A DNA stretch of 64,000 nt, taken from the IMG/VR virus record IMGVR_UViG_3300034073_003542, positions 124,001-188,000 of that record. One strand, written 5' to 3'. Shown piece by piece: positions 5,580 through 51,855 of the stretch (the stretch's first letter is position 1; the number at the start of each line of letters is the position of its first letter). The notes below the pieces were generated by a model, which saw nothing but the letters and a program-made list of their open reading frames with translations, made no database searches and was not told the origin of the DNA. Made by a program: the position numbers and the translations under genes.

Positions 5580-6776
5580 ATGGAGAAAAATATGAATATC
5601 AAAACTCGCCGCTCTGCATTTACCCTTGTCGAACTTCTAGTTGTAATTGCTATTATTGGTTTATTAGTAGCAATTTTACTCCCAGCCCTTTCTTCTGCTA
5701 GAAATTCTGCTCAGGCAGCAGCAAGCGGATCAAATTTAAGCACATTTGGTCGTGGTTTCATGATTTTCTCCACAGAAGATAAGCGATCACGCATGAGTAG
5801 CGGCGCTTTTGATCATTTAAGAGATGGAGATGTTAGAAAAGTTGGATGGGTTGCTGATATTATTAGGATTAAGGTGTCAAATCCAGGTAAGGCGCTTGAT
5901 CCAGCTAATACTTATCAGGTAAATGAAAAGGTTGCCGACTATATTGGAGCTACCAATACAACTAAAGCTAATCCTGTTCGCTGGAATAATAAAACAGCAG
6001 ATGTTCATTTTGGTGGAGCTAATGGCCCCACAGATTTTGCTGGATCACCAACACAAGCACAAAAGAATAAATTATGGGAAGACGGATATAACACAAACTA
6101 TGCAACAACATGGCAGTTTAGTCGTGGCGATGTTGTTCCTGGGTCTGACGGAAAGATTAATTCTAATGGAGCTATGAATCCTGTAACATCTGATCCTTCT
6201 AAATGTCCTCTAGATGGTGACGGCCCATTAACAGAAAAGAAATTAACTGGTGGAGGAGTAAGTCGTGATAGAGTTGCTGTAATGGGTGCGGCTCGTCCAG
6301 GCGACGGTTCTGATGCTCTTGTTACTGATGCAATGTTTACCACCTTTAATAATTTCTTTGGAACAGATCAAACAATGATTACAACTGGAGGTATTTTAGT
6401 TGAATCATTTACTGATGGAATGAATTGTCCTTTTACTGATGTTACTCTTGGTGGTGGCACAGATCAAAAAATTCATGAAATTAATGATATTTTCCCTATT
6501 CATGGTTCTCGTAAAACAACTGTTGGAGCAAATACTCTTCTTACAGGAGGATATGCCCAAGTTTTATTTGCGGACGGTCACGTTGCCAAAATTGAGGATG
6601 TGGGCGGTTATCAAGATAATCCTGACAGTTGGCTAGGCCCATATAAAACTGGTGGTGTTCCAACAGCCTCTTCGTTTGAAATTAATAAGAGTGGCTATGA
6701 TGAAGTTAGAGAACTGATCTGGCTCCATCAAATAGGTAACTCGTCAGGTGGTGTTGGCGGAGGTTCTGTAGAGTAA
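5580..6776 (+). CDS. DUF1559-type prepilin N-terminal cleavage/methylation domain protein with H-X-DG C-terminal motif
   Basis: RRSA|FTLVELLVVIAIIGLLVAILLPALSSAR...SNL; C-terminal H...GGYAQVLFADGHV. Likely start at ATG 5592 after GGAG. Confidence 0.9.
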   Translation: MEKNMNIKTRRSAFTLVELLVVIAIIGLLVAILLPALSSARNSAQAAASGSNLSTFGRGFMIFSTEDKRSRMSSGAFDHLRDGDVRKVGWVADIIRIKVSNPGKALDPANTYQVNEKVADYIGATNTTKANPVRWNNKTADVHFGGANGPTDFAGSPTQAQKNKLWEDGYNTNYATTWQFSRGDVVPGSDGKINSNGAMNPVTSDPSKCPLDGDGPLTEKKLTGGGVSRDRVAVMGAARPGDGSDALVTDAMFTTFNNFFGTDQTMITTGGILVESFTDGMNCPFTDVTLGGGTDQKIHEINDIFPIHGSRKTTVGANTLLTGGYAQVLFADGHVAKIEDVGGYQDNPDSWLGPYKTGGVPTASSFEINKSGYDEVRELIWLHQIGNSSGGVGGGSVE

Positions 6777-7060: not shown

Positions 7061-7520
7061 TTTCTTTCTTTCCTATTTTTTGAATTGTAGAATCAGCTCC
7101 AACTATCTCATACAGATCAACTTTATTGACTATCTCATTATCTTTAATCCAGCGTATTTCTCCGGTATTTAGACACACGCACATCCTTGTGCCACTTTTC
7201 TTAAAGTCTGTAGTTAATATATACCGTAAATGATTGGTTTTACAATCACACGAACATATAGAAACCTCAAAACTATCTCCTGGAGATAATTCTTCGAGAT
7301 AAAATTCACCTATGGCTTTATCGCTCATCTTCTTGCCATCTGCTAAAATACTCAGAATATTTTTCTTCTTCGTATTCTTGCTCTTTCTCCTTTTTATTTA
7401 GTTTATCAACTCGATGTTCTCTGTTGATATCTTTGATGAATTTTTTATCTTTGCGCTTTTTCCCATAATTATTCTTGCGGGAAAATGCTTTGCCTTCAAA
7501 CTCGTCGTTGTGTGACATAA

Positions 7521-8270
7521 TTAGTCTTTTACCTTATTCTCCTCTATCCACTTAATATACGAACTCACCCTGGTGTGACCAGACTCTTTATTATAGCGTC
7601 TACGTGTCTTTGTGTCAATCGTTTCCGATACAAAACTATTTACACCAGCTAATTTGCCGTCGATAAATAAACCGCCCCCACTATCACCGCTCTGTATAAA
7701 AAATCCAAGCTCTTTTTGTTGGCGTGTCCCAACAGGAAACGGACAAAAAATCATTTCTGGTTTTGATCTATAGATATAGTTTAATCCAGCCCTCTTATTT
7801 CCGTCATTATATAGTTTTTCGTCATGAAATCTCCCAGTAAATCCATAGCCAGCAACTTCCACCTTCTTACCTGTTTCGTTGCGATCAGTAAATAGTTCTG
7901 GATATTTATCTAATTCAAAGCTTTTCTGAGAATATCCTAGAGCTAAATCTACAGTCGCAAATGTTTTTGAGTTATAGTCTTTATGTATAAACACTTTTTC
8001 TAAAAGAAACTTTTTGGTCCCATGAACCACAACACAAATTTCTCTGTCATCAACAACATGAGCAGCCGATAAAACGTGGTGATCGTCAATCATTATACAA
8101 GAACCACAATAAACTCCACCCTTGTCATCAGAAGCAATCAATAAACACACAAAAGGAAACTCGTTACCTTTTTCTATGTATTTTTCGTCTTTAGTATTTG
8201 GGTCAGTAACGCCCCCATAAGATATGGCTGTTAGAAATATAGCTAACAATAGTTGTTTTAAATATGTCAT
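7521..8270 (-). CDS. Secreted trypsin-like (S1) serine protease
   Basis: Signal peptide; catalytic motifs VLSAAHV, DLAL, GDSGGGLF. Confidence 0.92.
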   Translation of the reverse strand: MTYLKQLLLAIFLTAISYGGVTDPNTKDEKYIEKGNEFPFVCLLIASDDKGGVYCGSCIMIDDHHVLSAAHVVDDREICVVVHGTKKFLLEKVFIHKDYNSKTFATVDLALGYSQKSFELDKYPELFTDRNETGKKVEVAGYGFTGRFHDEKLYNDGNKRAGLNYIYRSKPEMIFCPFPVGTRQQKELGFFIQSGDSGGGLFIDGKLAGVNSFVSETIDTKTRRRYNKESGHTRVSSYIKWIEENKVKD

Positions 8271-8333
8271 ATTATATATCCTCCAGATGAGAAATTAACA
8301 TATTCTTATACACCTATTGAATTATGTGGGGAA

Positions 8334-8711
8334 TTATTCTATAGATTTTAGCCATTCCCTATATCTTTTGGGCATATATCCTATTATTTTTCCTTTTTCT
8401 TTATCTTTATCAAATATCCTTGATTCTGGTATAGTCTTTATTCTATATTTCTTTTTAATCTCTTCGTCTTTTTCAATATCGATATAACACACGATATATT
8501 TATCTGATTCTGGAATACCGCCCAACAAAATGTCTCTTTTAAGTTTATGACAATAGGTACAGTATTCTGCCCCGAATATCACAAGGATCGGCCTGTTGGT
8601 TTTTTCGGCCAATTTTTGCGCTTCTGGTAACGACTCAATTATAAATCCTTCTGCTAAACTTGATGAACTAATGACTAGACCCAGAAATATCGCAATTAAT
8701 ATTTTTCGCAT
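8334..8711 (-). CDS. Exported thioredoxin-fold protein
   Basis: Signal peptide; FGAEYCTYCHKL (CxxC); cis-Pro loop TIP. Confidence 0.85.
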   Translation of the reverse strand: MRKILIAIFLGLVISSSSLAEGFIIESLPEAQKLAEKTNRPILVIFGAEYCTYCHKLKRDILLGGIPESDKYIVCYIDIEKDEEIKKKYRIKTIPESRIFDKDKEKGKIIGYMPKRYREWLKSIE

Positions 8712-9600
8712 GTTTACCTAGAATCCTTCCTTTTTGAGTTCTTTGAACCATCCCGGTTCTTAATAGATACGGCTCAATACTGTTTTCAATAGTGTCGATG
8801 GCAATACCTGTCATCGAACTAATTGCTTTCAGCCCTAATGGATTACCAATATTCTGTTGCAGAACTTGGATGTATATTCTATCATACACATCTAGCCCAT
8901 TTTCGTCTATCCCCTGTGTAGAAAATACTTCATCGACAGACAATTTGTTGTTATCTCCTGATGCTGTATACATTTGAAACCATTGAATACGGGCGTTTAA
9001 GATTCGGGGCGTTCCTTTACTACGCTTTGCAATCTCGCTCAGAGCTTCATTATCAAGATTTAATCCAAGACGCTCGGTATTAGCTTTTGCTAATTGTACA
9101 AGCTCTGGGGTATTATAAAATCTCAGATGTTCTTTGATTTGAAAACGATCATAAAACGGCTGACTAAGACTTCCTCCACTAGTTGTGGCCCCAATAAGAG
9201 TAAAGGCTGGAATAGCAATTTCCTCTGGTTCTTTTTCCAAAACGATATTGATTTTGAAATCTTCCATTACTGGATAAAGAAATTCTTCTACCAAAGTTGG
9301 CAAACGATGAATTTCGTCAATAAAAAGAACAGAGCGTTTAGTCATTCTCAATAGGTATGGAAGTATATTTTTGACCTTCCGAAGATTGGCGGCGTTTGTG
9401 ATATGGAGGTCAACCCCTAGCTCATGGGCAATAGCACCCGCCAACGTCGTTTTACCGAGGCCAGGAGGCCCGTCAATTAAAACATGGGGGTGGACGACCC
9501 CTGCGTTTTTACAGCCATCAGTAGTTACCCTAAGACGCTCTACCGTTTCGGTTTGACCAATAATATCACCAAAAGTTGTGGGACGAAAAGCAAGTGTCAT
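8668..9600 (-). CDS. ruvB: Holliday junction branch-migration AAA+ helicase RuvB
   Basis: FRPTTFGDIIGQ, GPPGLGKTT, LFIDEIHRL, EEFLYPVMEDF, FTLIGATT, DRF, RSKGTPR, C-terminal winged helix (IEPYLLR.G.VQRTQKGR). Confidence 0.96.
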   Translation of the reverse strand: MTLAFRPTTFGDIIGQTETVERLRVTTDGCKNAGVVHPHVLIDGPPGLGKTTLAGAIAHELGVDLHITNAANLRKVKNILPYLLRMTKRSVLFIDEIHRLPTLVEEFLYPVMEDFKINIVLEKEPEEIAIPAFTLIGATTSGGSLSQPFYDRFQIKEHLRFYNTPELVQLAKANTERLGLNLDNEALSEIAKRSKGTPRILNARIQWFQMYTASGDNNKLSVDEVFSTQGIDENGLDVYDRIYIQVLQQNIGNPLGLKAISSMTGIAIDTIENSIEPYLLRTGMVQRTQKGRILGKHAKNINCDISGSSH

Positions 9601-10037
9601 TTTAGACTCTCCAAGTTACTCAAGATATATTTCAACAAAGCGCCAACTTCATCTATTGGATTTTTAGCAAACCCCTTATCAATTAAGAGTTTTGCTTCTT
9701 TTTCCGTAAAGCCGTAGCCAACCAAAATTTTAGCACACTGGTTTTGCTTGTCAAGCGATAGGATTGGCTTAGACACTTCCTCAATTTCAATTGGTTCTAT
9801 AGGTTTAGTCGCTGGTGTTGGAGCCTCTTTTGGTTTCTTCTCTTTATAGAGAATCTTGAGCTTGTTGATTTGTTTGGGTTTAAAAATCTCCCCACAATCA
9901 CAAACAACCATAAAATTCTTAGTCTGACATTCCTTCAAAGAAAGCCAATGAGTATATCCACAAGTTTTTTGTGGACATACATATTTTAGGTGAACATCAA
10001 GTTCAATCGGTTTCTGGTAGCTCTTCTTCTTTTTCAT
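9597..10037 (-). CDS. Zn-ribbon protein with C-terminal RuvA domain III-like (UBA-type) module
   Basis: CPQKTC...CDC; Pro/Glu/Lys-rich linker; C-terminus QNQCAKILVGYGFTEKEAKLLI...VGALLKYIL resembles RuvA_C (EAVxALVALGYxxxEA...LIRxAL). ATGA overlap with ruvB. Confidence 0.65.
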   Translation of the reverse strand: MKKKKSYQKPIELDVHLKYVCPQKTCGYTHWLSLKECQTKNFMVVCDCGEIFKPKQINKLKILYKEKKPKEAPTPATKPIEPIEIEEVSKPILSLDKQNQCAKILVGYGFTEKEAKLLIDKGFAKNPIDEVGALLKYILSNLESLK

Positions 10038-10422
10038 TGTCTTGGTCTGCAATATAAAACACCCAATCATCTTTAGTGTCGTCAAAACAAGTTTCAATCA
10101 ATCCCCTATTAGCAAGACTGTTTAAGATATTACTAACCAATCTTGAATTTAGGTTCTGCAAAAATTCACTGTATATTTCAGATGTCATAAAATATCGCAA
10201 CTCTTTTGTTTTCTTATTGCGTTCTTGTTTGAGAACCTGTTTAGCAATAAGCAGTGATTCATTGTATGACAACAAATGATCTAGTCTTTTTTGTTCTTCT
10301 TCTGTAGGATCTTCTATATCTTCTATGTCGATAGAGTTGGGCCTGCCAAAACTTTGAAAAACCATAGTTCTAGCAAAATTGATAAACTGATCTAGGTTTT
10401 CAATAACATATGTTTCCTGCAT
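10003..10422 (-). CDS. Hypothetical protein (paralog of 22151..22516)
   Basis: ORF track; shared motif SLANRGLIETCFDD...WVFY. Confidence 0.6.
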   Translation of the reverse strand: MQETYVIENLDQFINFARTMVFQSFGRPNSIDIEDIEDPTEEEQKRLDHLLSYNESLLIAKQVLKQERNKKTKELRYFMTSEIYSEFLQNLNSRLVSNILNSLANRGLIETCFDDTKDDWVFYIADQDNEKEEELPETD

Positions 10423-10831
10423 TATAGTTCCTAATTAAGAATGTCAAATAAATTTTTGTAATATGGCGGCTCCTTGATTAGATATTCGGCATTACTAATT
10501 TTGTAGTTTTTATACTGAACACCTAATTTATCGCAAATAAATATGTAATCTTTCCAATATTGTGCTTTTTGTGGACCAAAAATAGAATTAACTATATCTT
10601 TGGCTAGTTTTTGAATATCGTAACTGTCTTCTTTGTTAATTTTACTAGCTGGAAAATCACCAAAAGAGAAAAAGAAACAGTCAGCTAAATGATTGCCAAA
10701 ACCTATACTAAATATATCAGAATAGTTAGTTGGAGGAGTAGAAAATATCCCTGATCCAAATAAACCAAATGGATCATAAGGATTTATGTCTTCGGATTCT
10801 TCCTCGTTGTCTTGATAGTCGTCGTACATTT

Positions 10832-11800
10832 TTATCCAATACAAAATTTGTTAGCTATTTTTTCGGCCAGCTTATAGCCCTGACTACTCAAATATTTGTT
10901 ACCAGAGTAGTATAGAGTTTTGCTGGTGTGCTTGATAAACTCAACAACCTCTACTAGCAATTGATTCTTTGAATCATCTTCTTCTAGATTTTCATCTATC
11001 AATTCAGCTACGTATGTATATATGGGATCATTATTAGTAGTAACTGTTTTACAACCCTTTGCTACATCATTCAATGTATGCGTATGCCATTGAGTGCTGC
11101 ATTTTTTATAGTTGTGTTTTACAGTAGTAGAAACTCCCTCTAAAGCCTTTTGAAGTTCTTCGATTGTATAACGACCATTACCAACTCCCTTATAGTCTAA
11201 CAAACTAGTAAAGAATGGAGCTTTACTTTCCCAAGGCTTTCTCCACCAACTAAAAGGAACACGCAAAAGTTGGTTGGGTTTAATAGCTAAAGTATCGCCC
11301 CCAAAACGGTTTGCTAGTTTCTTCTGTAGACCATTCCATACAATACGCGAGACACGCCTAGCAGATTCTTTAAGAACCCAATAGACTTGATAGCCGTTGC
11401 GAGTCTCTACGATCCATGTAGGGACGAGAGGGAACGCCCCAATTTGTTTAAGAAAACCAGCCTTCGCCGTGTTTACTTGACGAGCAGGAAGATACTTGCC
11501 GTCTGCACCACGACCAGCATCTAAATCAACAAAACAAGTTTTATGAGAACGAACTTCGTTGAGAGTTGCATAGCCATTAACATAGAAATACAAATCTCGA
11601 TCAGTATTTTCTGTTTCCTTAATAGCCTTATCTATAGTCCCACATTTAAGCATAGGACTGGTTTTCTTTTTGGGGTTTTGATTATAGGCAAAAAGAGTTG
11701 TTGCTTTTAGACTCTTTAGAAACTTATCAATTTTTACCTTATGATTTTTGGAATGATTTGTTTTATCGAACGGATTCTTAATTGTTGAATTAACTTGCAT
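10832..11800 (-). CDS. RepB-type DNA primase (AEP superfamily)
   Basis: DLYFYVNG, CFVDLD, PTWIVETRNGYQVYW, GGD...KPNQLLRVP. Confidence 0.75.
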   Translation of the reverse strand: MQVNSTIKNPFDKTNHSKNHKVKIDKFLKSLKATTLFAYNQNPKKKTSPMLKCGTIDKAIKETENTDRDLYFYVNGYATLNEVRSHKTCFVDLDAGRGADGKYLPARQVNTAKAGFLKQIGAFPLVPTWIVETRNGYQVYWVLKESARRVSRIVWNGLQKKLANRFGGDTLAIKPNQLLRVPFSWWRKPWESKAPFFTSLLDYKGVGNGRYTIEELQKALEGVSTTVKHNYKKCSTQWHTHTLNDVAKGCKTVTTNNDPIYTYVAELIDENLEEDDSKNQLLVEVVEFIKHTSKTLYYSGNKYLSSQGYKLAEKIANKFCIG

Positions 11801-11832
11801 ATTTTTTCCTTTGTTTTCCTAAAAGTCCAAAT

Positions 11833-11871
11833 AAAAATGAGCGAGTTAGTTTTTTACGCTAACCCGCCCAT
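11833..11871 (-). terminator. Rho-independent terminator after rIIB
   Basis: Minus-strand hairpin GGGCGGGTTAG-N9-CTAACTCGCTC followed by ATTTTT. Confidence 0.75.
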
Positions 11872-11879
11872 CTTATTTA

Positions 11880-12761
11880 TCAGCGACACCAACTGCATCC
11901 ATTAGGGCCACACATTCCATCATCCTCATCTTCATAATCTTCGTCGTCAGCATATTCCTCTTCGTCATACTGACTCCAATCATAATCCTCTTCATCGTAT
12001 TCTTCCTCGTCTACATCATCGTAAGAGTAGTCAGAAGCATAAAGAGGCTTTTTCAATTCGCCTTCATACTCTCCGACCACTTCATACTTACAAGTACGCA
12101 GCTTTTCACAATTGCAATCTGTTGGTACAGAAACAACGTCTGCTGGATTAACCTTGCAAATCATCAAATGATCGCCATGATCAACAGAACCAAATCCGGC
12201 AGCATAATTCAATGCTCCAACATGGTATCCATTAGAACAACCACGAGAACGATCATCGTCAACCTTTGCTCGTGGCATTTCAGGCTTATCTCCTACCATA
12301 TTTCTAGTCTTACCAGTATGCTTATCTGTATAATCTGGACGCACACACTTATACGCTAGGAAACATCCATCTTCGGTAATTGGCAGATGTTCATGATCAA
12401 GAAAATCATACAATTCCTTTTGACTTGTCATGGAAGGATTTTGCATGAGATTCTCAAGAAACTTAACAAGTCCATCGAAAGGAATTGATTCTTCCATAAA
12501 CTTGATGATTCTCTTCGCAATAGAAGAGTGAACAACTTCTCCGTCGAAATATACCTGACCATCCTTAACTTCGACACGACCTCCGCTAACGGCTGGTAGA
12601 GCTTTCTTGACATCAACAATCTCTAGCAACTGTTCAACAGTAGCAGTTGGAAGATTTTCCAAAATCATCTTACGATTAGGATGATCTTGTAGCACAGTAA
12701 AAGTCTTGTTACCAAGAACAAGGGTTAAAACACCATCAGTATAAATAAACGGAACGCTCAT
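11880..12761 (-). CDS. rIIB: RIIB-like protein
   Basis: FLENLMQNPS...ELYDFL...LPITEDGCFLAYK.V..DYTDKHTG, MPR.KVDDDR..GCSNGYHVG..NY; adjacent to rIIA. Confidence 0.85.
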   Translation of the reverse strand: MSVPFIYTDGVLTLVLGNKTFTVLQDHPNRKMILENLPTATVEQLLEIVDVKKALPAVSGGRVEVKDGQVYFDGEVVHSSIAKRIIKFMEESIPFDGLVKFLENLMQNPSMTSQKELYDFLDHEHLPITEDGCFLAYKCVRPDYTDKHTGKTRNMVGDKPEMPRAKVDDDRSRGCSNGYHVGALNYAAGFGSVDHGDHLMICKVNPADVVSVPTDCNCEKLRTCKYEVVGEYEGELKKPLYASDYSYDDVDEEEYDEEDYDWSQYDEEEYADDEDYEDEDDGMCGPNGCSWCR

Positions 12762-12778
12762 CTTTTCTTTCTCCTAAA

Positions 12779-15334
12779 TTAAGAATTAATCAAACCACCA
12801 ATAGCTACTTTAAACGCCTCATCTTTTTTAACCGCAGAAAACCACTTATTGCGATAATCTCGATTATTATCAATCTCTGTGAGACTGCCAGGATTGCTTG
12901 TTCTCATAGTATACTTGAAAGCTGGTGACTTGTCAAGCTCACTCTTTAGCTCTTGTCGTAGTGTTTTAATGTCTAGAGGAGCAAAGCTAGTAGAACTGCT
13001 TGCAAAATCAATCTTAGTAGCTTCGTCTGTAATAGTTCTTTGTTGCATATCCATTAGTCTCTTCATTTTCTGAATACCGCTATAAATAGATCGACTACTA
13101 ATTTGATCTAGGCCATATACCTTTAGAATACTATCAATATGAGCATAGTATTCGTCTAGCTTTAGTTCACAAGCACCAATCCTGATTTTATCTGTTTGGT
13201 TAGTAAAGAAGTCGCCCATAATCAAGTAATCAATATGGTCTACAATTTTCTTGTTCTTAACATACTTCTTATAATCAAACCCAAAAACACTAATCATATG
13301 GTACAGAATTTGACCGACAGAGGAATGATTGGCTCCATAACCCCACTGACTATCATCAATATTATCCATTGACACACGGATTTTATCAGCAATAGACATA
13401 TAATCCAAGTACTTGTCTAGCTTTTTGGCTGACTTTTTGATTTCACGGATCATCCATGTATTAAAGTCGATCAACTCATAATCTTCTTTCAGTTTTTCCA
13501 CAGACTTTTCTTTGATAGCATAGATATTTCCAGAAACACCCAAAATGTCTTTCATTTCAAGATAATAATTATGGATTGTATTGAGTCCCACAAATCCTTC
13601 ACAAGAAATATATCTGGTGATAGGAATGTATACAATCTCTTCCATATCTTCAAGAGACTCCAAATGATCTTCATTAAGAGTTTTTAGATAAGGAGCGTGA
13701 CCATAGTTAGTATCCAGAGCAACTGTGTTAGAATCATCGCCACACAAGAAGAATAGATCATCACTACTTACAGAACCCGTCTTAGCTCTTGCCTTGCGGG
13801 TTTGAGCGATAAGGTATTTGTAGTCTGAAACCTTCTTGAAGTTTTCAAGACCAACATCATTGATAAGATCATCAACACCCACAAGACTTTCGGTATGATC
13901 CTTGGTATCTACAATAAGATAACAATAACAGTTATTCTGCTTGTAATACGCACTAAGAATCTTTTTAGCTTGATTGAGACTCTTTATATCGCAATAGAAA
14001 AACTCAACATTAGACTCTGTATAACCTCCACCCCAACTACTAGTTCCTAGAGTTCCAGAGTAGATTTGCGTGGTAAGAGCAATCTTAGTACGAGAACGTC
14101 TGGCAGCATAATAGTAGCCGAAAACATACAAAGCTTTATCGGCACTGAGATTATATGATAGGTCTGCTCTATCACTAAGATTATAGGTCTTTTGTGTTGT
14201 TGGACAAGTCCAAGACGCACCAACTCCCCAATCATTAATACTGCGGAGCTTATTAAAGGTCTGGATTGCTTCTACACGAGTTTTGCAGGTAGAAATCTTG
14301 TCGGAAAATTCCTTTTTGAGAGAATCGTAGATTTCTTGTGTCTTAGCTCTAAGAGTCTTGATAACAGCTTTAGTGTACTGCAATCCCTCGCGGCTTATAT
14401 CCATGTCGAGTTCACCAATTCCAAACTCGATTTCTAGATAAAGATTCTTGCTATTAATGTTAGACAAAAAGGACTTGTAATTAGTGGCGTTTTCTTTTGC
14501 TTTTTGATTCCATTGAGCAATGTGGGCTTGTTCCTCTTTTTCTACATCACCAATAAGATGTGTAGTATCTACTGGATAAGCAATATTTCCCATAATAGCG
14601 ATAACATTAGAGCCAACATTATGATACGCATTAGGAAATAGATTGTTGGAATTAGTATTACAAACATTCCAATTATCTCCAGAAAGAAGAATATTACGAT
14701 TGGAATAATCCTTCTTGAAGTCAATACCATATCCACCAAAAATGGTAGGCTTTTGCTTTAGGTAGTGAAATACTCTGACTGCTTTTTGAGAGAACTCAGA
14801 ATAATCGTATCGCTTAACGGCAAAACTGATTTCCAAACCATTTGGTTCAGTTGTATCGCAAGAGTGCATCAAATTAAGTGTTGGGATTCCATCATCACCA
14901 ATACTGGCGATATATGTATATTGCTTACCATTAAAAAAGCTTGTTGAAGTAAAGCTCTTAGTATAAGCAAAAGGACTCTTACTTCCTAGACCAAGACATC
15001 CAACAAAATCATTGCTGGTATTTTTGGTTGAAGCTCCATAAGTTGTATAAAGCTTCTCCATATCGGTCTGACTAAGACCTGTGCCAAAATCCCGAACCTT
15101 AAAATTAGGGTCGGTATCACTTGGAAGATAAACATGAAAAGGATTGGTATTTTTTGCAGCAATATGTGCGTCGTTTGCATTGGTGCAAAGTTCACGAATT
15201 ACGGCCCCAATTTTATCTGAATATAAAGAATTGCTCAAGACGTTAAACATCTTGGCGGATTGCTGAATAGTGAACTGATTTTCGCTCTTAACACCACGGG
15301 AATGAACTTCAACTGTCTTATCTGCCAATTTCAT
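12779..15334 (-). CDS. rIIA: RIIA-like protein with N-terminal GHKL (Hsp90-like) ATPase
   Basis: LYSDKIGAVIRELCTNANDAH, VRDFGTGL, YGASTK, GCLGLGSKSPFAY, LDMDISREGL. Confidence 0.88.
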   Translation of the reverse strand: MKLADKTVEVHSRGVKSENQFTIQQSAKMFNVLSNSLYSDKIGAVIRELCTNANDAHIAAKNTNPFHVYLPSDTDPNFKVRDFGTGLSQTDMEKLYTTYGASTKNTSNDFVGCLGLGSKSPFAYTKSFTSTSFFNGKQYTYIASIGDDGIPTLNLMHSCDTTEPNGLEISFAVKRYDYSEFSQKAVRVFHYLKQKPTIFGGYGIDFKKDYSNRNILLSGDNWNVCNTNSNNLFPNAYHNVGSNVIAIMGNIAYPVDTTHLIGDVEKEEQAHIAQWNQKAKENATNYKSFLSNINSKNLYLEIEFGIGELDMDISREGLQYTKAVIKTLRAKTQEIYDSLKKEFSDKISTCKTRVEAIQTFNKLRSINDWGVGASWTCPTTQKTYNLSDRADLSYNLSADKALYVFGYYYAARRSRTKIALTTQIYSGTLGTSSWGGGYTESNVEFFYCDIKSLNQAKKILSAYYKQNNCYCYLIVDTKDHTESLVGVDDLINDVGLENFKKVSDYKYLIAQTRKARAKTGSVSSDDLFFLCGDDSNTVALDTNYGHAPYLKTLNEDHLESLEDMEEIVYIPITRYISCEGFVGLNTIHNYYLEMKDILGVSGNIYAIKEKSVEKLKEDYELIDFNTWMIREIKKSAKKLDKYLDYMSIADKIRVSMDNIDDSQWGYGANHSSVGQILYHMISVFGFDYKKYVKNKKIVDHIDYLIMGDFFTNQTDKIRIGACELKLDEYYAHIDSILKVYGLDQISSRSIYSGIQKMKRLMDMQQRTITDEATKIDFASSSTSFAPLDIKTLRQELKSELDKSPAFKYTMRTSNPGSLTEIDNNRDYRNKWFSAVKKDEAFKVAIGGLINS

Positions 15335-16897: not shown

Positions 16898-17062
16898 CTA
16901 GTCGTCTATTATAAAACTAGCAACAAAATACACGAGGATGCCTGGAACAACGCCAGTCATTATAATACCAACAAGAGTTGCTAGTCTAAGTAATGTAACA
17001 TCAACATTGTATTTGTTAGCTAAAAAACTACAAACACCCATAAATTTTGGTTTAGCGTTCAT
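16898..17062 (-). CDS. PspC-domain membrane mini-protein (54 aa)
   Basis: Below the ORF-track cutoff. Manual translation MNAKPKFMGVCSFLANKYNVDVTLLRLATLVGIIMTGVVPGILVYFVASFIIDD matches the PspC pattern GVCxxLA...xxR...xYxx. ATGA overlap with the ligase stop. Confidence 0.75.
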   Translation of the reverse strand: MNAKPKFMGVCSFLANKYNVDVTLLRLATLVGIIMTGVVPGILVYFVASFIIDD

Positions 17063-18186
17063 CTATCCTCCTTTAAACAATTATTAATATCAACTCTTGC
17101 AAAATTAGGTGTTCCTAATCCTGTTAATCCATTATAAAGGAATTCTACCTTTTTGCCAATCCACTTCTTTTTATCGGCCAGAAATTGGACAGCCTGTTCA
17201 TACGAACCTTTGAATGTTGCGTCAAACTTCAAGCCGTTCCAATCAAGACTGATTCTTTTTCCCGTTCCACTCCAATTTCCTTCGCCTTCTGTGATATCGG
17301 TAATAATAGCATCGTCAGAATCTTCGGGCTTAATTTTCAAGAGATTCTTACTTCGCTTGTTTTCATATCCCATATCTTTTAGTCGTAGCATAGCTCCTTC
17401 ATGTCCCATATCAATTAACTGTAGATAATAATCATTTAGATCATTTTCTGAATTAATATCAAATGAAGGAACTTCAATTATATAGTCTAACGGAACTACG
17501 TAAGTATCAATAAACCTCTTACGTTCTGTATAACAGCAAGTTTTATCTATTCCGAATCCATATCCATCATAAACATAATAGCGAACCATTTTTTCACCTT
17601 GTTCTAAATGGTCATCAGTAATATGTACTGTTCTTCTAATTAGTTTCATTAACTCATTTAGTTGTTGCTTCAAATCTTCATTAAATAGCTCTCCGTCCAA
17701 AACTGCATCTGGATATTTTTCAAAGAATGGAGCTAGAGATTTCTCGATATGAGGACAAGTCAAATACTTTTCTCCCTTACGAGTCCATAATCCATCCTTA
17801 GTTGCAACACATCTTCCACCATTGTACTTTGTTTGTAGTAAATATTCTCCCTTAGTTAAATCAATTTTGTGTTTGTAATCCTTATATTGTTTGGCAAGCA
17901 TAGGCTCAACATAAGCCATGTTGTCGATTTCATTTTTGTTCTCAAAATAGCCTGTTTTTTGCTGCTTTTTGTACTTATTTTCCACTTCTTTTTGAGCTTG
18001 TTCGCTACCAGTAGTTTCGTTCTTTTTGCCTACATTTTTTGGTTGGGCAATTGTCCACTCAGAAGTAACTAGCTCACCCGCTTCAAGTCCACTAACAGTT
18101 CGATATTTATCTCCCTGTTGTTCCATTCGCCAAATACGAACGCGGCCCATAGAATCTCGTGAATATAGTGTTGGGTATGATTTCAT
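17059..18186 (-). CDS. ATP-dependent DNA ligase
   Basis: PMLAK, QTKYNGGRC (adenylated K), LDGELF, YVYD, EGAMLR, LLKIK, OB domain. Confidence 0.93.
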   Translation of the reverse strand: MKSYPTLYSRDSMGRVRIWRMEQQGDKYRTVSGLEAGELVTSEWTIAQPKNVGKKNETTGSEQAQKEVENKYKKQQKTGYFENKNEIDNMAYVEPMLAKQYKDYKHKIDLTKGEYLLQTKYNGGRCVATKDGLWTRKGEKYLTCPHIEKSLAPFFEKYPDAVLDGELFNEDLKQQLNELMKLIRRTVHITDDHLEQGEKMVRYYVYDGYGFGIDKTCCYTERKRFIDTYVVPLDYIIEVPSFDINSENDLNDYYLQLIDMGHEGAMLRLKDMGYENKRSKNLLKIKPEDSDDAIITDITEGEGNWSGTGKRISLDWNGLKFDATFKGSYEQAVQFLADKKKWIGKKVEFLYNGLTGLGTPNFARVDINNCLKEDR

Positions 18187-18460: not shown

Positions 18461-18835
18461 CTACTGTTGGGGTTTGTCAAGCTGATTTCTGTTTCTAACC
18501 TTTATAAGATAATTCAGGGCATTAATGAGAGAAGGAATATCATCACCCAATTTGCCAAGTCCTTCGTTACACCGACTGCAAACGTGACCACGAAAAGTAT
18601 CGTCTGTATGATCGTGATCTATTACCCATTTCCAAGGAACCTTACCACAAATTTCACACACTTCGGGTCTAGGTGGTGCTTCCTTCTTTAATTTCTTTCT
18701 GACTTTTGCGTGATGCTTGATGCACTCTCTACATCTTGTATCAAGACGATCTTTATAAAGACGATGTTTCGGAAACTCAGAAAGTTTCTTAGTTTCTTTA
18801 CAGTATTGACAAGGTTTTTCTTTTTTGTTTTTCAT
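18461..18835 (-). CDS. Endonuclease VII-family (His-Me) nuclease, probably free-standing homing type
   Basis: N-terminal CxxC...CxxC; CEICG, IDHDH...RGHVCSRCNEGLGKLGDD. Confidence 0.85.
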   Translation of the reverse strand: MKNKKEKPCQYCKETKKLSEFPKHRLYKDRLDTRCRECIKHHAKVRKKLKKEAPPRPEVCEICGKVPWKWVIDHDHTDDTFRGHVCSRCNEGLGKLGDDIPSLINALNYLIKVRNRNQLDKPQQ

Positions 18836-18844
18836 TTTTTGTAT

Positions 18845-19194
18845 TGGTGGAGATGTTGGCATACGATAGCCAAGTCCTAAAAATATTTCAGATAGCTTTT
18901 CTACAAGTTTATTTTGTTCTTTTTAAGAGAAATTATAGAACAAACAACATTCTTTTCTCTTTGCTTGTTTATCTTAGTTTGTTGATACAAGCTTCAACAA
19001 AAGCAAAAGGATTTTACATCAACTTTTTGGACGCCTCCTTTTAGCTTCCTAAAGTTGTCGTAGCCGTTATTAGGCTGCGAGAGCTAATTGATTTACGTCA
19101 ATTAAACGTTTTTATCGACTTGTTAAAGTGGCCTGTCGATAAACCACTACTTGCTTTACTAACCTCTTTATTCTAGTCGAAACCTTTCATCCCC
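18845..19194 (-). ncRNA. ssrA: tmRNA (SsrA), 350 nt
   Basis: 5' GGGGAUGAAAGGUUUCGAC; 3' ...UUGGC-UAUCGUAU-GCCAA-CAUCUCC-A-CCA; acceptor stem with G3-U70; tag ORF (D)VNQLALAA followed by TAA TAA at 19099..19067; dedicated promoter. Confidence 0.95.
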
Positions 19195-24358: not shown

Positions 24359-25297
24359 TTAAACTGTTTCGACTGCATTATATTTTTCTCCATAATCTTT
24401 TAGGAATTGAGATATAGCCACGTTTTTTTGCTTGAACTCATAGTCTATGGTTGCTGGTAACAAAAATAGCTCTTCGTGAAGCTCATAAACATAATCTGAA
24501 TGAGCTTTGTCTGTAGGAGATGCTTTGCCATTACTAAAGTGCATAACTGGCGTAATATCTCGCCATGTTTCATAACACATTACCATAGCAGTCTCAGGAT
24601 CAATACCAACATTATTTAGTCGATGATGGTGAGAATCGTATGTTATGGGAATTTGTGTAGCAGGATGGAAAATCTCTACTAATTCTTGTACATTCCAACA
24701 ATTAGGTTTGTCGTCAATTTCGATAGTAATGCGCGATTTACAATTATCGTGCAATTGGTCAAAAGATTTGAGAAATCGCCCAATAATTTCTTCGTGGGAG
24801 CCTTGCTTGTTATTGATATGAAAGTTAATGGGCGAATTATGATTAGTTGGAAGTCCGATGCGGTCGAAAAACCAACTATAGAAATTTAGTTCTTGAATAG
24901 AGTTCTTGACGGCATTTTCATTAGTAGATGCTAATACCACATAAGGACTCGGGTGGTTTGAAATTCTAACACTAGATTGCTCGATTGTTGATTTGATATT
25001 AGTAAATTCATTATCAATATCGTTATAATTAGGCAAATCTTCTAGCTTAACATTAGCTTCGTCCATTGTGATAAGGGGAAACAGAGAAGAAGAACAACGA
25101 TAATCCCAACCTAATTGATCGCACGTTTGAATAATTTTGGTAGTTACTTTGAGATTATTAAGAATTCGCCCACCTAATATTGCTAGGGCATCTTGTCTAG
25201 GTAAAGCTGAAAATCTAGAAAATGTCATTGTCTGGAACTCGTATCCAGATTTCTTTTTATCTGCCAAATAAATACAGCATAGAGAAGGTTTGTTCAT
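24359..25297 (-). CDS. uvsE: UV-damage endonuclease UvsE/UvdE
   Basis: YRCSSSLFP, RISNHP..YVVLAS, SIQEL, IEIDD, PITYDSHHH, TW...P.MHFS, AHSDYV, DYEFKQKNVA. Confidence 0.9.
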   Translation of the reverse strand: MNKPSLCCIYLADKKKSGYEFQTMTFSRFSALPRQDALAILGGRILNNLKVTTKIIQTCDQLGWDYRCSSSLFPLITMDEANVKLEDLPNYNDIDNEFTNIKSTIEQSSVRISNHPSPYVVLASTNENAVKNSIQELNFYSWFFDRIGLPTNHNSPINFHINNKQGSHEEIIGRFLKSFDQLHDNCKSRITIEIDDKPNCWNVQELVEIFHPATQIPITYDSHHHRLNNVGIDPETAMVMCYETWRDITPVMHFSNGKASPTDKAHSDYVYELHEELFLLPATIDYEFKQKNVAISQFLKDYGEKYNAVETV

Positions 25298-39557: not shown

Positions 39558-40118
39558 TCATTTAAAAGCTAACTCCCAATGACTTGCACAAACAGGCAAA
39601 TATTTTTCTTCGCATCCTAATTCCACAGAATTACCTTCGATGGTAGGAATCCCATCTATCATTTTCAGATTGAATACAGCCTTTTGTCTACAATAAAAAC
39701 ACGTAGTCTTAATTTCATCAATAACATCAGCTATAGATAATAATAAAGCAGAAGCAGGAAATGGTTCTTTTCTAAAATCAGTTCTTAAACCATAACAAAT
39801 AATAGGTGGACTACCTGTATATGTAGCTCTCCTCATACATTTAATGATTTCGGTTGATAAAAATTGTACTTCATCAACTAAAATAATATCAGCATCTTCA
39901 TGCCAGCCAAACATAGTTTGGTCTTGTTGAATAATAAAATCCGCCTCGGTTTCTAATCCGGCTCTAGATTTTACCGTTCTTTCTCCAAAACGAGTATCAA
40001 TAGCTGGCTTAACTACATCTACTTTCTTACCTTGTTGACGATAAGAATGAGCGGTTGCTAATAAATCAAGCGTTTTGGCACTTCCTACAACCCCATACTT
40101 AAAATAGAGTTTAGCCAT
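39558..40118 (-). CDS. tdk: Thymidine kinase
   Basis: LYFKYG...AKT, VKSRAG, ILVDEVQFL, YGLRTDF, CxxC...C Zn site, YLPVC..H. Confidence 0.95.
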   Translation of the reverse strand: MAKLYFKYGVVGSAKTLDLLATAHSYRQQGKKVDVVKPAIDTRFGERTVKSRAGLETEADFIIQQDQTMFGWHEDADIILVDEVQFLSTEIIKCMRRATYTGSPPIICYGLRTDFRKEPFPASALLLSIADVIDEIKTTCFYCRQKAVFNLKMIDGIPTIEGNSVELGCEEKYLPVCASHWELAFK

Positions 40119-40987
40119 TATTTATATTCCTTATAACATTTATTGTTAGCTATTGAATTAATTATTCCATGACTGATATTATAGTCCTTAGCTATATGTC
40201 TATGTGTTTCTTTTCCTTTAGATAGTCTTTTTCTTATTTCTTTAACTTGTGTAAGATTTAATTTTCTTTGACTTAATAAATATTGTTCATATTTTATTCT
40301 TTGTTTTATTATCTTATCAAAATTTTTCTTTTTTCTTTTTAGGAATATTGTTGCGTCCTTATACATAAAATCCATTAGTTTTTTAATTTCTTTGTACCCA
40401 TATAATCTAATATCGCAAGTATAAGTGTTTTGTTTGGTTTTTTTATATTTTACCATAAAAGAAGATATATTTAATTTTCTTTTAAAGAACCTTAATAAAT
40501 ATTCACTAAAGTCACTATTAGAAATAATCATAAAGGTATATTTATTTTGATTTTTACTCTTCGTAACAGATATACCTCCATCACCATCAAAATATCCTCT
40601 TATAAAGTGATGAATTAAATTTTTAGGTATGTGTCTGTATGGAAATTTTAAGGTATAACTTTTTTGATTATCTAATCCCTTATTAATTAAGTGATTAGTA
40701 AAAATTTCTCCGTATATTTTGATATATTTATATTTACTTTGTTTATTTTTGTTGTTTGGAGTATAATGTTTCGAATCTCCTATTTTCCCAGAATATTTTG
40801 TGTACTTTTTAAAGTAACGCAATATCTCTATATCTCTAGCCTGTAATTCAATTTGAACGTACTTATTACTTTTCTTAGTAGAGATATGACCATCTGCACA
40901 TATAAATCCAAATAAATACGCTTTATCTTCTGTATCTATGACTTTAAAATAATCGTGATCTTTATTATGTATATGTTTATTATTCAT
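40118..40987 (-). mobile_element. Free-standing LAGLIDADG homing endonuclease
   Basis: AYLFGFICADG and HFIRGYFDGDG; C-terminal HTH. Confidence 0.88.
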
Positions 40988-51783: not shown

Positions 51784-51855
51784 AGACCGCAGTTGGAATC
51801 GAACCAACAAATGCTGTTTTGCAGACAGCCACCAACGCCAATTGATTTTGCGGCC
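51784..51855 (-). tRNA. tRNA-Cys(GCA)
   Basis: GGCCGCA/TGCGGTC acceptor stem, GCTGT-CTGCAAA-ACAGC anticodon arm, GTTGG-TTCGATT-CCAAC T-arm, U73 discriminator; no encoded CCA; promoter at 51882..51909. Confidence 0.92.

What the first reader, a model, noticed from the sequence alone, without database searches (positions are those of the whole stretch)
8668..10037. Non-canonical RuvAB: RuvB paired with a Zn-ribbon protein carrying only a RuvA domain III-like module
Seen: a full-length ruvB is translationally coupled (ATGA) to an upstream 146-aa ORF built as Zn ribbon (CxxxxC...CxC), a flexible Pro/Glu/Lys linker, then a three-helix segment resembling RuvA domain III. It has no OB-fold or HhH domains, and no ruvA or ruvC is present in the window. 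Established: RuvA domain III is the linker-tethered module that binds and loads RuvB, while domains I-II recognise Holliday junctions. Inference: the phage swapped the DNA-recognition part, so the RuvB motor may be recruited to a different substrate (forks, phage origins, packaging/recombination intermediates, or a protein target) or hijack host RuvB. This is a candidate undescribed system.
Basis: partly seen in the sequence, partly recalled or inferred. Interest (0 to 1): 0.8.

Follow-up and report, generated by a model that had tools for sequence, protein, structure and literature searches.

The report
Phage RuvB with a mini-RuvA adaptor
A large uncultivated phage encodes its own RuvB DNA motor next to a small protein that keeps only the RuvB-binding end of RuvA, joined to a basic zinc ribbon; this is a natural, stripped-down variant of the bacterial RuvAB recombination machine that appears not to have been described.

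Summary
On the minus strand, a 146-aa ORF (9597-10037) overlaps a 310-aa ruvB (8668-9600) by ATGA. RuvB passes the NCBIfam RuvB equivalog cut-off.

The 146-aa protein has three parts: an invariant four-Cys zinc ribbon, a disordered Pro/Glu/Lys linker, and a three-helix C-terminus. Four tests place that C-terminus with RuvA domain III:
- a profile search of PDB sequences
- Foldseek
- hhalign
- Pfam RuvA_C hits on relatives

The residues matching E. coli RuvA L167, G171 and Y172 are the most conserved.

No RuvA domain I/II or RuvC is in the window, but an endonuclease VII resolvase is (18461-18862).

The family is large (339 clusters at 50% identity). It was found only in viral and metagenome contigs, and always with this architecture.

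The gene sits directly upstream of phage-type ruvB in 91 of 105 unique loci, but it was lost at least six times. Two unknown genes upstream (10003-10422, 10431-10844) accompany ruvB in all 105.

Best reading: a RuvA-derived adaptor. Domain III docks on and activates the phage RuvB, and the basic zinc ribbon supplies the anchor. The interaction, the zinc ribbon's ligand and the substrate are untested. I rate it a new variant of a known kind.

The parts
8668..9600 (-). Phage ruvB, 310 aa. AAA+ motor with Walker A (GPPGLGKTT), Walker B (FIDEIH), sensor 1, arginine finger (YDRF), sensor 2 (GTPRI) and a C-terminal winged helix with a basic beta-hairpin (RTQKGR).
   Evidence: Pfam RuvB_N, RuvB_C and AAA_lid_4. 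NCBIfam NF000868 298.6 > 282. About 40% identity to solved RuvBs at E = 8e-61. Motifs read from the alignments.
9597..10037 (-). Gene for the 146-aa zinc-ribbon + RuvA domain III protein ('ZnR-D3').
   Evidence: ORF. Family of 27 close and 339 distant clusters. Structure model.
9873..9992 (-). Zinc-ribbon core, residues 16-55. Cys21, Cys26, Cys46, Cys48; conserved His30 and Trp31.
   Evidence: Conserved columns. pLDDT above 90. The N-domain (residues 1-66) has median pI 9.4 and net charge +7 over 141 relatives. Foldseek finds only generic zinc ribbons.
9762..9842 (-). Disordered Pro/Glu/Lys-rich linker, residues 66-92.
   Evidence: pLDDT 47-53. Length varies from 3 to 66 residues in the family and the sequence is not conserved.
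9600..9761 (-). RuvA domain III homologue, residues 93-146. Three helices, motif L105-V-G-Y108-G109-F110-T-x-x-E114.
   Evidence: Profile against PDB sequences: 1ixs_A (RuvA D3) E = 0.0036, and 7 of 8 hits are RuvA. Foldseek: top 16 hits are all RuvA D3, TM 0.74 to 1ixs_A, rmsd 1.5-1.9 A. hhalign against RuvA: P = 3.5e-4. Pfam RuvA_C hits 12 of 141 relatives, best 1.5e-5. Residue mapping.
9597..9600 (-). ATGA stop/start overlap between the ZnR-D3 gene and ruvB.
   Evidence: Read directly. In relatives the two genes abut or overlap, from about +4 to -34 nt.
10003..10422 (-). 'up1', 139 aa, unknown function. Overlaps the ZnR-D3 start by 35 nt. Possibly a winged helix. Acidic tail ending in PETD.
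   Evidence: Present upstream of ruvB in 105 of 105 unique phage loci. Alignment A4. No significant PDB, Pfam or PHROG match. Weak winged-helix leads.
10431..10844 (-). 'up2', about 132-137 aa, unknown function. Acidic Tyr/Asp-rich N-terminus; invariant C-terminus ending YYK(G/N)LFDILN.
   Evidence: Present in 79 of 80 and 78 of 80 loci. Alignment A5. No match in PDB or the Atlas.
10832..11800 (-). 322-aa protein with weak primase-like similarity. Context only: a replication/recombination neighbourhood.
   Evidence: Pfam RepB_primase E = 0.0014, below cut-off; phrog_3123 E = 9.7e-08. Syntenic in at least 40 of 80 loci.
18461..18862 (-). Endonuclease VII-type Holliday-junction resolvase, 133 aa. 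The likely resolving partner in the same genome.
   Evidence: Pfam PF02945, 42.9 bits against a cut-off of 23.6, E = 4.6e-11. Motif DHDH...RGxxCxxCN.

Best explanation
The 146-aa protein is a RuvA-derived adaptor for the phage's own RuvB motor.

**D3 end.** The C-terminal three-helix domain is homologous to RuvA domain III. [quoted passage not shown] In bacteria, domain III bound there recruits RuvB, works as a nucleotide-exchange factor and gives the motor a fixed point to pull against.

**Zinc-ribbon end.** The tetrameric OB-fold/HhH platform of RuvA is replaced by a small, strongly basic four-Cys zinc ribbon on a flexible tether. I infer that this anchors the complex to DNA, or possibly to the acidic tails of the two conserved upstream proteins.

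**Role.** The complex would drive branch migration or fork remodelling during phage recombination-dependent replication and repair. Junctions would be cut by the phage's endonuclease VII and sealed by its ligase.

**Shown:** the domain architecture, the homology to D3, the conserved pairing with ruvB, and the absence of RuvA domains I and II.

**Inferred:** the physical D3-RuvB contact, what the zinc ribbon binds, and the substrate.

The adaptor enhances rather than enables the system, because several related phages have lost it and kept RuvB.
For: **D3 homology, four independent tests**
- A profile of the family hits RuvA D3 chains first among 177,635 PDB sequences. 1ixs_A scores E = 0.0036, and 7 of 8 hits are RuvA.
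- Foldseek's top 16 PDB hits are all RuvA D3. Probability is 0.99 for the top eight and 0.66-0.98 for the rest. TM is 0.74 to 1ixs_A, ahead of UBA/CUE domains.
- hhalign against a RuvA alignment gives P = 3.5e-4, confined to D3. The controls up1 and up2 give P = 0.38 and 0.98.
- Pfam RuvA_C is by far the commonest family matched by relatives: 12 of 141, best 1.5e-5. An ESM Atlas sister cluster carries RuvA_C in 50% of its members.

**Interface residues**
- Family positions L105, Y108, G109 and F110 align with E. coli RuvA L167, L170, G171 and Y172.
- These are among the best-conserved positions of the C-terminal domain: G109 100%, L105 87%, F/Y110 98%.
- L167A and L170A abolish RuvB activation without affecting junction binding (PMC2628435).

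**Role of D3.** Its function as RuvB recruiter, nucleotide-exchange factor and fulcrum is taken from PMC9477746.

**Pairing with ruvB**
- ATGA overlap in the window.
- ruvB abuts or overlaps downstream in 79 of 79 evaluable IMG/VR loci and in 4 of 4 other contigs.

**The phage RuvB looks active**
- All catalytic motifs and the DNA-binding hairpin are kept.
- The phage clade (51 unique sequences in that alignment) differs from bacterial RuvB at both elements of the D3 site. Alpha3 reads GDLAAxL in bacteria and KNILPYL in phage. The hairpin tip is 5 residues shorter. Other phage-specific substitutions exist, such as R to S in GATTSGG.

**Other points**
- The N-domain is basic: median pI 9.4, net charge +7.
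- A recombination and repair context lies in the window: endonuclease VII, ATP-dependent ligase, UvdE.
Against: - No test of physical interaction was possible. The structure tool takes single chains only.
- The window's own protein does not reach any Pfam RuvA_C score. Each homology statistic is modest alone, because the domain is only about 50 residues.
- The zinc ribbon matches no characterised DNA-binding family. A basic pI is weak evidence for DNA binding.
- The gene is missing from 14 of 105 unique phage ruvB loci, through at least six independent losses, with nothing in its place within 10 kb.
- In those lineages the RuvB alpha3 and hairpin show no relaxation. That surface may therefore serve another partner as well.
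- up1 and up2, not ZnR-D3, are the universal neighbours of ruvB.
Confidence: 0.6

Rival explanations
1. This is an adaptor to a protein, not to DNA. D3 binds RuvB, but the basic zinc ribbon binds another phage protein. Candidates are the acidic C-terminal tail of up1 or the acidic N-terminus of up2. The four-gene cassette up2-up1-ZnR-D3-RuvB would then form one machine, with DNA recognition supplied by up1 (a possible winged helix) or up2.
For: up1 and up2 accompany ruvB in 105 of 105 and about 98% of loci. The up1 gene overlaps the ZnR-D3 start. up1 has a near-invariant acidic tail ending in PETD, and up2 has an acidic Tyr/Asp-rich N-terminus. These are complementary in charge to the +7 zinc ribbon. 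The PETD-type tail is kept in 78 of 91 loci with ZnR-D3 but only 7 of 14 without it. Weak winged-helix leads exist for up1.
Against: There is no detectable homology for up1 or up2 and no interaction test. The tail correlation is confounded, because the tail is encoded in the region that overlaps the ZnR-D3 gene. The winged-helix leads are all below significance.
Confidence: 0.2
2. This is a pure regulator. The protein only delivers a D3 module that tunes the RuvB ATPase cycle through nucleotide exchange. The zinc ribbon is a folding or stability module with no targeting role.
For: D3 binding itself stimulates nucleotide exchange and hydrolysis in RuvB (PMC9477746). The gene is dispensable in several lineages. 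The zinc ribbon has no specific structural relatives.
Against: The zinc ribbon is the best-conserved part of the protein: mean column identity is 70% for residues 1-68 against 53% overall. Conserved surface-type residues include H30, W31, K40 and K55, with a consistently high positive charge. That is more than a passive scaffold would need. In the published lever mechanism D3 must be anchored to act as a fulcrum.
Confidence: 0.1
3. This is host interference. The D3 domain targets the host's RuvB, either to hijack it or to block host RuvAB by competing with host RuvA.
For: Isolated D3 domains bind RuvB, and RuvA and RuvB from different species can complement each other (PMC9477746).
Against: The gene is translationally coupled to the phage's own ruvB in every locus where it occurs. 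The phage RuvB's D3-docking elements have diverged together from the bacterial ones, which suggests a private pair. No ZnR-D3 gene was found without an adjacent phage ruvB among evaluable loci.
Confidence: 0.06
4. The resemblance is only a generic UBA-like three-helix bundle. The protein is an unrelated small zinc-finger protein that happens to lie next to ruvB.
For: UBA, CUE and RuvA_C folds are small and similar. Foldseek E-values are all above 0.2, and the window protein has no Pfam hit itself.
Against: RuvA D3 outranks every UBA/CUE structure in both sequence-profile and fold searches. Pfam RuvA_C, not UBA, is what relatives match. The sequence motif and the functionally tested residues line up. 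Adjacency to ruvB in 79 of 79 loci is not chance.
Confidence: 0.04

Closest known systems
Bacterial RuvA (Holliday-junction branch migration complex subunit RuvA; Pfam RuvA_N, HHH_5, RuvA_C)
   Same: The C-terminal domain of about 50 residues is homologous to RuvA domain III. It is joined by a flexible linker, is encoded immediately upstream of ruvB, and keeps the hydrophobic residues (E. coli L167, L170, Y172 equivalents) needed to activate RuvB.
   Different: Domain I (OB-fold, tetramerisation) and domain II (two HhH motifs, DNA binding) are absent. A 65-residue basic four-Cys zinc ribbon takes their place. There is no evidence of tetramer formation or junction specificity. The protein is 146 aa against about 200. 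It is dispensable in some lineages.
Bacterial RuvB (NCBIfam NF000868 / TIGR00635)
   Same: Same three-domain architecture and all catalytic and DNA-contact motifs. About 40% identity to solved RuvBs. Passes the NF000868 cut-off.
   Different: The phage RuvBs form a monophyletic, long-branch viral clade. The N-terminus is about 15 residues shorter. The alpha3 helix sequence differs. The presensor-1 hairpin tip is 5 residues shorter. The T. thermophilus R147 DNA contact is replaced by Ser. The protein scores below the TIGR00635 cut-off (283.4 < 299.05).
Isolated RuvA domain III fragments used in structural work (PDB 1ixs, 7x7p, 7pbl)
   Same: A D3 module without the junction-binding core. This is the closest structural match to the phage domain.
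   Different: Those are laboratory truncations. Here nature has made a D3 protein with a new N-terminal module and kept it across hundreds of phage lineages.
Jumbo-phage recombination modules (RuvC-like, endonuclease VII or RusA resolvases without RuvB; PMC7824862)
   Same: A large phage genome with its own resolvase (endonuclease VII) and repair genes.
   Different: [quoted passage not shown] This clade encodes a true RuvB plus a RuvA-derived adaptor.

Membership tests
RuvB (NF000868 / TIGR00635 / Pfam RuvB_N + AAA_lid_4 + RuvB_C) | Whole-protein HMM score above the curated cut-off | tested here: met
   NF000868 298.6 bits against 282. However, TIGR00635 scores 283.4 against 299.05, which is below cut-off. 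Pfam RuvB_N 155.6, RuvB_C 67.0 and AAA_lid_4 32.9 are all above their cut-offs.
RuvB | Walker A, Walker B, sensor 1, arginine finger and sensor 2 intact | tested here: met
   GPPGLGKTT, FIDEIH, GATT, YDRF and GTPRI are invariant in 19 phage sequences and align with the bacterial motifs.
RuvB | Presensor-1 beta-hairpin (RuvA D3 docking element) | tested here: met
   Present, but with a tip 5 residues shorter (GEGPAARS becomes EKEPE) in all phage sequences.
RuvB | C-terminal winged helix with a basic beta-hairpin contacting DNA (P. aeruginosa R314/R317/R319) | tested here: met
   The equivalent is RTQKGR, that is R, K, R. Residue roles are from PMC10071043.
RuvB | ATP-dependent branch migration activity | not testable with these tools
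   Needs biochemistry.
RuvA (canonical) | Domain I OB-fold with the conserved VREDAQxLYGF motif | tested here: not met
   A RuvA HMM aligns only its D3 part to the protein. hhalign covers only RuvA positions 140-198. The model shows a zinc ribbon in that place.
RuvA (canonical) | Domain II with two helix-hairpin-helix motifs | tested here: not met
   No HHH or RuvA_N Pfam hit. No helices are predicted before residue 95 except a five-residue turn.
RuvA (canonical) | Domain III (RuvA_C) tethered by a flexible linker | tested here: met
   Linker pLDDT is about 50.
RuvA (canonical) | Tetramer that binds four-way junctions | not testable with these tools
   Needs oligomeric-state measurements and DNA-binding assays.
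Pfam RuvA_C (PF07499) | Match to the family HMM | tested here: inconclusive
   The window protein itself has no hit at E <= 1. Twelve of 141 relatives match at E <= 0.01, best 1.5e-5. Family-profile and fold searches point to RuvA D3.
Zinc ribbon (generic four-Cys) | Two Cys knuckles on beta-hairpins; metal binding | tested here: met
   C21/C26 and C46/C48 are 99-100% conserved and sit on predicted beta-strands with pLDDT above 90. Zinc binding itself is not testable here. No specific zinc-ribbon family matches.
Endonuclease VII (PF02945), for the ORF at 18461-18862 | HMM above cut-off and the HNH-type DHDH...N motif | tested here: met
   42.9 bits against 23.6. Motif seen.

The most novel reading that the evidence does not exclude
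The conserved cassette up2-up1-(ZnR-D3)-RuvB is a phage-specific DNA-remodelling machine of a new composition. A bacterial-type RuvB ring is targeted by two proteins of unknown fold. The RuvA remnant survives only as an optional activating tether. The RuvB motor would then work on a substrate chosen by up1 and up2, such as stalled or reversed forks, replication origins or concatemer junctions, rather than on RuvA-bound Holliday junctions. It would also be a natural demonstration that D3 is a portable AAA+ regulatory module.
Probability: 0.3. Interest if true: 0.78.

Novelty: new variant of a known kind. Interest (0 to 1): 0.62.

Why it matters
RuvAB is the textbook bacterial branch-migration motor. 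Its current mechanism gives RuvA domain III two roles: nucleotide-exchange factor and fulcrum.

Here evolution has run the domain-swap experiment. D3 is kept, the junction-binding core is discarded, and a zinc ribbon is added. A RuvB whose D3-docking surface has changed in step sits beside it. Related phages have also dropped the adaptor altogether.

This gives a compact, easily expressed system for three questions:
- What D3 alone contributes to a RuvB motor.
- Whether RuvB can be retargeted by other modules.
- What two unknown, always-linked proteins do.

It also corrects the published generalisation that large phages lack RuvB-type motors. The clade is substantial: at least 507 IMG/VR contigs encode a relative of this RuvB.

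Tried and rejected
1. **Named relatives.** Pfam, PHROGs and NCBIfam on the 146-aa protein gave no hit. tblastn against 50,697 GenBank phage records gave no match. So there are no cultured or named relatives.
2. **Zinc-ribbon identity.** Foldseek of the N-domain alone returned only generic zinc ribbons at probability <= 0.15.
3. **up1 and up2 identity.** Profile searches of PDB sequences, hhalign against RuvA and against ZnR-D3, and the ESM Atlas gave nothing significant. They are not diverged RuvA domains I/II.
4. **Canonical RuvA elsewhere.**
   - A RuvA HMM run on six-frame ORFs of the window and about 230 related loci gave only D3-type hits on ZnR-D3 proteins.
   - A motif scan of all IMG/VR contigs, including this phage's whole contig, gave none. 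That scan is motif-based, so a very divergent RuvA could be missed.
   - The 146 kb of the contig outside the window was not read directly.
5. **Relaxation test.** If D3 binds alpha3 and the hairpin, lineages that lost ZnR-D3 might show relaxed conservation there. Only 2 of 19 deviating conserved columns fall in those elements, about the share expected from their length. The result is null.
6. **Relocation of the gene in ZnR-D3-less phages.** None lies within 10 kb. A close-relative scan found only the query's own contigs. Whole contigs were not tested.
7. **Cellular homologues.** A scan of GTDB genomes found none. It used one pattern only.
8. **Expression.** No RNA run was listed, and the DNA runs are subsurface metagenomes.
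9. **Promoter and terminator scan of 7400-12900.** Counts were not above shuffles.
10. **'Phage' ruvB hits in GenBank.** Those inspected (7 of 81) show cellular-type flanking genes, with ruvA directly upstream in five. None shows the phage-clade changes, and all are below 60% identity. They served only as a source of canonical RuvA and RuvB for comparison.
Full report
**What is in the sequence**

The finding lies on the minus strand of what is clearly a large phage genome. Almost every gene runs the same way, G+C is about 34%, and many ORFs are small with no known family. The window is part of IMG/VR contig IMGVR_UViG_3300034073_003542, which is 209,847 bp long. The DNA runs that hold it are subsurface metagenomes.

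ORF 8668-9600 encodes a 310-aa RuvB:
- Pfam RuvB_N 1.1e-45, RuvB_C 1.4e-18 and AAA_lid_4 5.7e-08.
- NCBIfam NF000868 scores 298.6 against a cut-off of 282. The older TIGR00635 model is just missed, at 283.4 against 299.05.
- The protein is about 40% identical to solved RuvBs, E = 8e-61.

ORF 9597-10037 encodes 146 aa. Its TGA stop overlaps the ruvB ATG as ATGA, and a GGAG lies 8-13 nt upstream.

**The 146-aa protein**

It has no Pfam, PHROG or NCBIfam hit of its own and no relative among 50,697 deposited phage records. It does belong to a real family:
- A word-indexed search found 27 metagenomic relatives.
- An exhaustive profile search found 339 clusters at 50% identity with E <= 1e-3, of which 226 have E <= 1e-10. 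The 150 shown are 80-184 aa long and nearly all match across the whole profile.
- Over 141 members, C21, C26 and C46 are invariant and C48 is 99% conserved. Y19, H30 and W31 are conserved at 90-99%.

AlphaFold2 on the family alignment (mean pLDDT 79) gives three parts:
- a zinc-ribbon core, residues 16-55, pLDDT above 90
- an unstructured Pro/Glu/Lys linker, residues 66-92, pLDDT about 50
- three helices at 95-107, 112-125 and 131-145

The linker varies from 3 to 66 residues across the family. The N-domain is strongly basic (median pI 9.4, net charge +7). The C-domain is mildly acidic.

**Is the C-terminus RuvA domain III?**

Four independent tests say yes.

1. A family profile searched against all PDB sequences returns eight hits. 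Seven are RuvA, aligned over domain III only. The best is the T. thermophilus D3 fragment crystallised with RuvB (1ixs_A, E = 0.0036).
2. Foldseek's top 16 PDB matches for the model are all RuvA D3. Probability is 0.99 for the top eight and 0.66-0.98 for the rest. TM is 0.74 normalised to 1ixs_A, with rmsd 1.5-1.9 A over 46-48 residues and 23-30% identity. UBA and CUE domains rank below.
3. hhalign against an alignment of five canonical RuvAs gives P = 3.5e-4, confined to RuvA positions 140-198. The two neighbouring proteins, used as controls, give P = 0.38 and 0.98.
4. When 141 relatives are scanned one by one, Pfam RuvA_C is by far the commonest family: 12 members, best 1.5e-5. The next family has 2. 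An ESM Atlas sister cluster carries RuvA_C in half of its members.

In a joint alignment, the family motif L105-V-G-Y108-G109-F110 lines up with E. coli RuvA L167-V-A-L170-G171-Y172. These are among the best-conserved positions of the C-terminal domain. L167A and L170A are known to abolish RuvB activation without harming junction binding (PMC2628435).

Each statistic is modest because the domain has only about 50 residues, but they agree.

**What is missing and what replaces it**

No part of the protein matches RuvA domain I or II.

Canonical RuvA was looked for in four places and not found:
- the window's six-frame ORFs
- Pfam scans of 96 window ORFs
- about 230 related loci
- a motif scan of all 2.9 million IMG/VR contigs using RuvA domain I patterns

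The motif scan is the only test that covers this phage's whole contig, and it would miss a very divergent RuvA.

The zinc ribbon resembles only generic zinc ribbons, at Foldseek probability <= 0.15. What it binds is unknown.

There is no RuvC. However, a 133-aa endonuclease VII resolvase lies at 18461-18862 (42.9 bits against a cut-off of 23.6). It sits next to an ATP-dependent DNA ligase (17059-18186), and a UvdE endonuclease is at 24359-25297.

**The phage RuvB**

All phage RuvBs retrieved form one long-branch clade apart from seven bacterial sequences. They keep:
- Walker A and B, sensor 1, the arginine finger and sensor 2
- the MEDF signature
- the basic C-terminal hairpin that contacts DNA in P. 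aeruginosa RuvB (residue roles from PMC10071043 and PMC10272136)

They differ consistently in both elements that form the D3-docking surface described by Wald et al. (PMC9477746):
- Helix alpha3 reads xGDLAAxLxxL in bacteria but SVKNILPYLM in phage.
- The presensor-1 hairpin has a tip 5 residues shorter.

Alpha3 is assigned from the order of secondary-structure elements given in that paper, not from a structure of this protein. Also replaced is the arginine equivalent to T. thermophilus R147, a DNA contact, which is serine here. A private, co-adapted D3-RuvB pair is the simplest reading, but it is an inference.

**Synteny, and a complication**

Starting from ZnR-D3:
- Four other metagenome contigs have ruvB directly downstream.
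- So do 79 of 79 evaluable IMG/VR loci, overlapping or abutting by about +4 to -34 nt.

Starting instead from the phage RuvB:
- 507 IMG/VR contigs encode a relative.
- Among 105 unique full-length RuvB loci with readable upstream sequence, 91 have ZnR-D3 directly upstream and 14 do not.
- In those 14, the gene order is up2-up1-ruvB, with up1 abutting ruvB and no ZnR-D3 within up to 10 kb either side (as far as each contig reaches).
- On the RuvB tree, Fitch parsimony gives presence at the root and six losses. Shuffled labels give a mean of 14.1 changes and a minimum of 10.
- The RuvBs of these lineages show no relaxation at alpha3 or the hairpin.

The adaptor is therefore ancestral and usually kept, but not indispensable.

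**The invariant partners**

The invariant neighbours are two proteins of unknown function.
- **up1** (10003-10422, 139 aa). Its 3' end overlaps the ZnR-D3 start. It ends in a near-invariant acidic EKPETD.
- **up2** (10431-10844). It has an acidic Tyr/Asp-rich N-terminus and an invariant C-terminal YYKGLFDILN.

Neither has a significant match anywhere. For up1 there are three weak pointers to a winged helix.

**How it most likely works**

Shown:
- the domain architecture
- the homology to D3
- the conserved coupling with an apparently active RuvB
- the absence of RuvA's junction-binding core
- a recombination and repair gene context

From established RuvAB mechanism (PMC9477746): D3 recruits RuvB, wedges open the neighbouring subunit to release ADP, and must be anchored to act as the fulcrum of the lever stroke.

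Inferred:
- The phage D3 docks on the phage RuvB in the same way.
- The basic zinc ribbon provides the anchor, on DNA (my preferred reading) or on the acidic tails of up1 and up2.
- The complex drives branch migration or fork remodelling, with endonuclease VII resolving the junctions.

I put 0.6 on this overall: about 0.9 on D3 homology, about 0.75 on D3-RuvB binding, and below 0.5 on DNA as the zinc ribbon's ligand.

Rivals:
- a protein-to-protein adaptor within a four-protein machine (0.2)
- a pure nucleotide-exchange regulator (0.1)
- interference with host RuvB (0.06)
- a coincidental UBA-like fold (0.04)

**Comparison with what is known, and novelty**

The RuvB is a member of the RuvB family, though a divergent viral branch. 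The 146-aa protein is not a RuvA: two of the three defining domains were tested and are absent. It carries a RuvA_C-type domain and probably works like the RuvB-facing half of RuvA.

A search for papers holding the terms RuvA, domain III, zinc ribbon and phage found none. A second search, for phage-encoded or phage RuvB, found only a comparative survey of 224 jumbo phages. That survey states that their RuvC resolvases are not coupled to a RuvB-like ATPase (PMC7824862).

The family was found only in viral and metagenome contigs. It was absent from a one-pattern scan of GTDB genomes and from GenBank phage records.

I rate it a new variant of a known kind. It is not categorically new, because both the motor and the docking domain are recognisable RuvAB parts.

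**Limits**

- No multimer prediction, biochemistry or expression data were available. No RNA run was listed.
- About 146 kb of the phage contig lies outside the window and was tested for RuvA only through a motif scan.
- 189 weaker family hits of the exhaustive search were not displayed. They could hide other architectures.

Noticed in passing
window 10003-10422 (-) and 10431-10844 (-): Two proteins of unknown function (up1, up2) are the invariant upstream neighbours of phage ruvB: 105 of 105 and about 98% of loci. up1 ends in a near-invariant acidic EKPETD. up2 ends in an invariant QPxYYKGLFDILN, which looks like a short C-terminal docking peptide.
   Followed up: partly
L098, L099, L100, L105, L116, L120, L123, L169, L173-L176, L188, L197, L199, L201, L208, L212-L214: Related phages in which the ZnR-D3 gene is cleanly absent, so that up1 abuts ruvB. 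There were at least six independent losses on the RuvB tree. The PETD-type tail of up1 is kept in 78 of 91 loci with ZnR-D3 but only 7 of 14 without it. That comparison is confounded, because the tail is coded in the overlap with the ZnR-D3 gene.
   Followed up: partly
window 18461-18862 (-), 17059-18186 (-), 24359-25297 (-): An endonuclease VII-type Holliday-junction resolvase lies next to an ATP-dependent DNA ligase, and a UvdE UV-damage endonuclease lies a few kb away. Together they form a phage-borne recombination and repair set in the same region as ruvB.
   Followed up: yes
window 5580-6776 (+): One of very few plus-strand genes in the window. It is a 398-aa type IV pilin or pseudopilin-like protein with a prepilin N-methylation motif and a C-terminal '...LFADGHV' segment. 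A related phage (L004, 2651-3949) carries a DUF1501 gene. From my own knowledge, both kinds of gene are typical of Planctomycetota and Verrucomicrobiota, so they may hint at the host.
   Followed up: partly
window 40980-42005, 45021-46409, 51784-51855 (all -), plus small ORFs: An RNA repair and translation set: RNA ligase with an OB domain, RtcB, a HAD_SAK_2 domain protein, peptidyl-tRNA hydrolase PTH2, and a tRNA-Cys. This suggests defence against host tRNA-cleaving systems.
   Followed up: no
window 40118-40987 (-): A LAGLIDADG-type homing endonuclease gene lies between thymidine kinase (39558-40118) and the RNA ligase.
   Followed up: no
L001 11663-12667, L003 10310-11314, L004 5293-6291: Related phages carry an actin-like gene (Pfam PF25216 'Volactin', a family named after a Haloferax cell-shape protein) downstream of ruvB: two genes away in L001 and L003, seven genes away in L004. 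It is not at that position in the window, where thioredoxin and a trypsin-like protease follow ruvB.
   Followed up: no
window 8334-8711 (-): A thioredoxin-fold protein with an N-terminal signal-peptide-like segment. Its start overlaps the last 44 nt of ruvB. The window's RuvB has a unique 12-residue C-terminal extension encoded in that overlap.
   Followed up: no
window 9754-9727 (-): A near-consensus sigma-70-like site (TTGACA, 16 nt spacer, TAAAAT, with an upstream TG) lies inside the ZnR-D3 gene, about 130 nt upstream of ruvB. Promoter-like sites in the region are not more frequent than in shuffles.
   Followed up: no
window 12779-15334 and 11880-12761 (-): An 851-aa GHKL/HSP90-like ATPase and a 293-aa protein lie upstream of the cassette. 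Homologues of the 293-aa protein in related contigs carry Pfam Phage_T4_rIIB. This looks like an rIIA/rIIB-like pair next to the replication and recombination block.
   Followed up: partly
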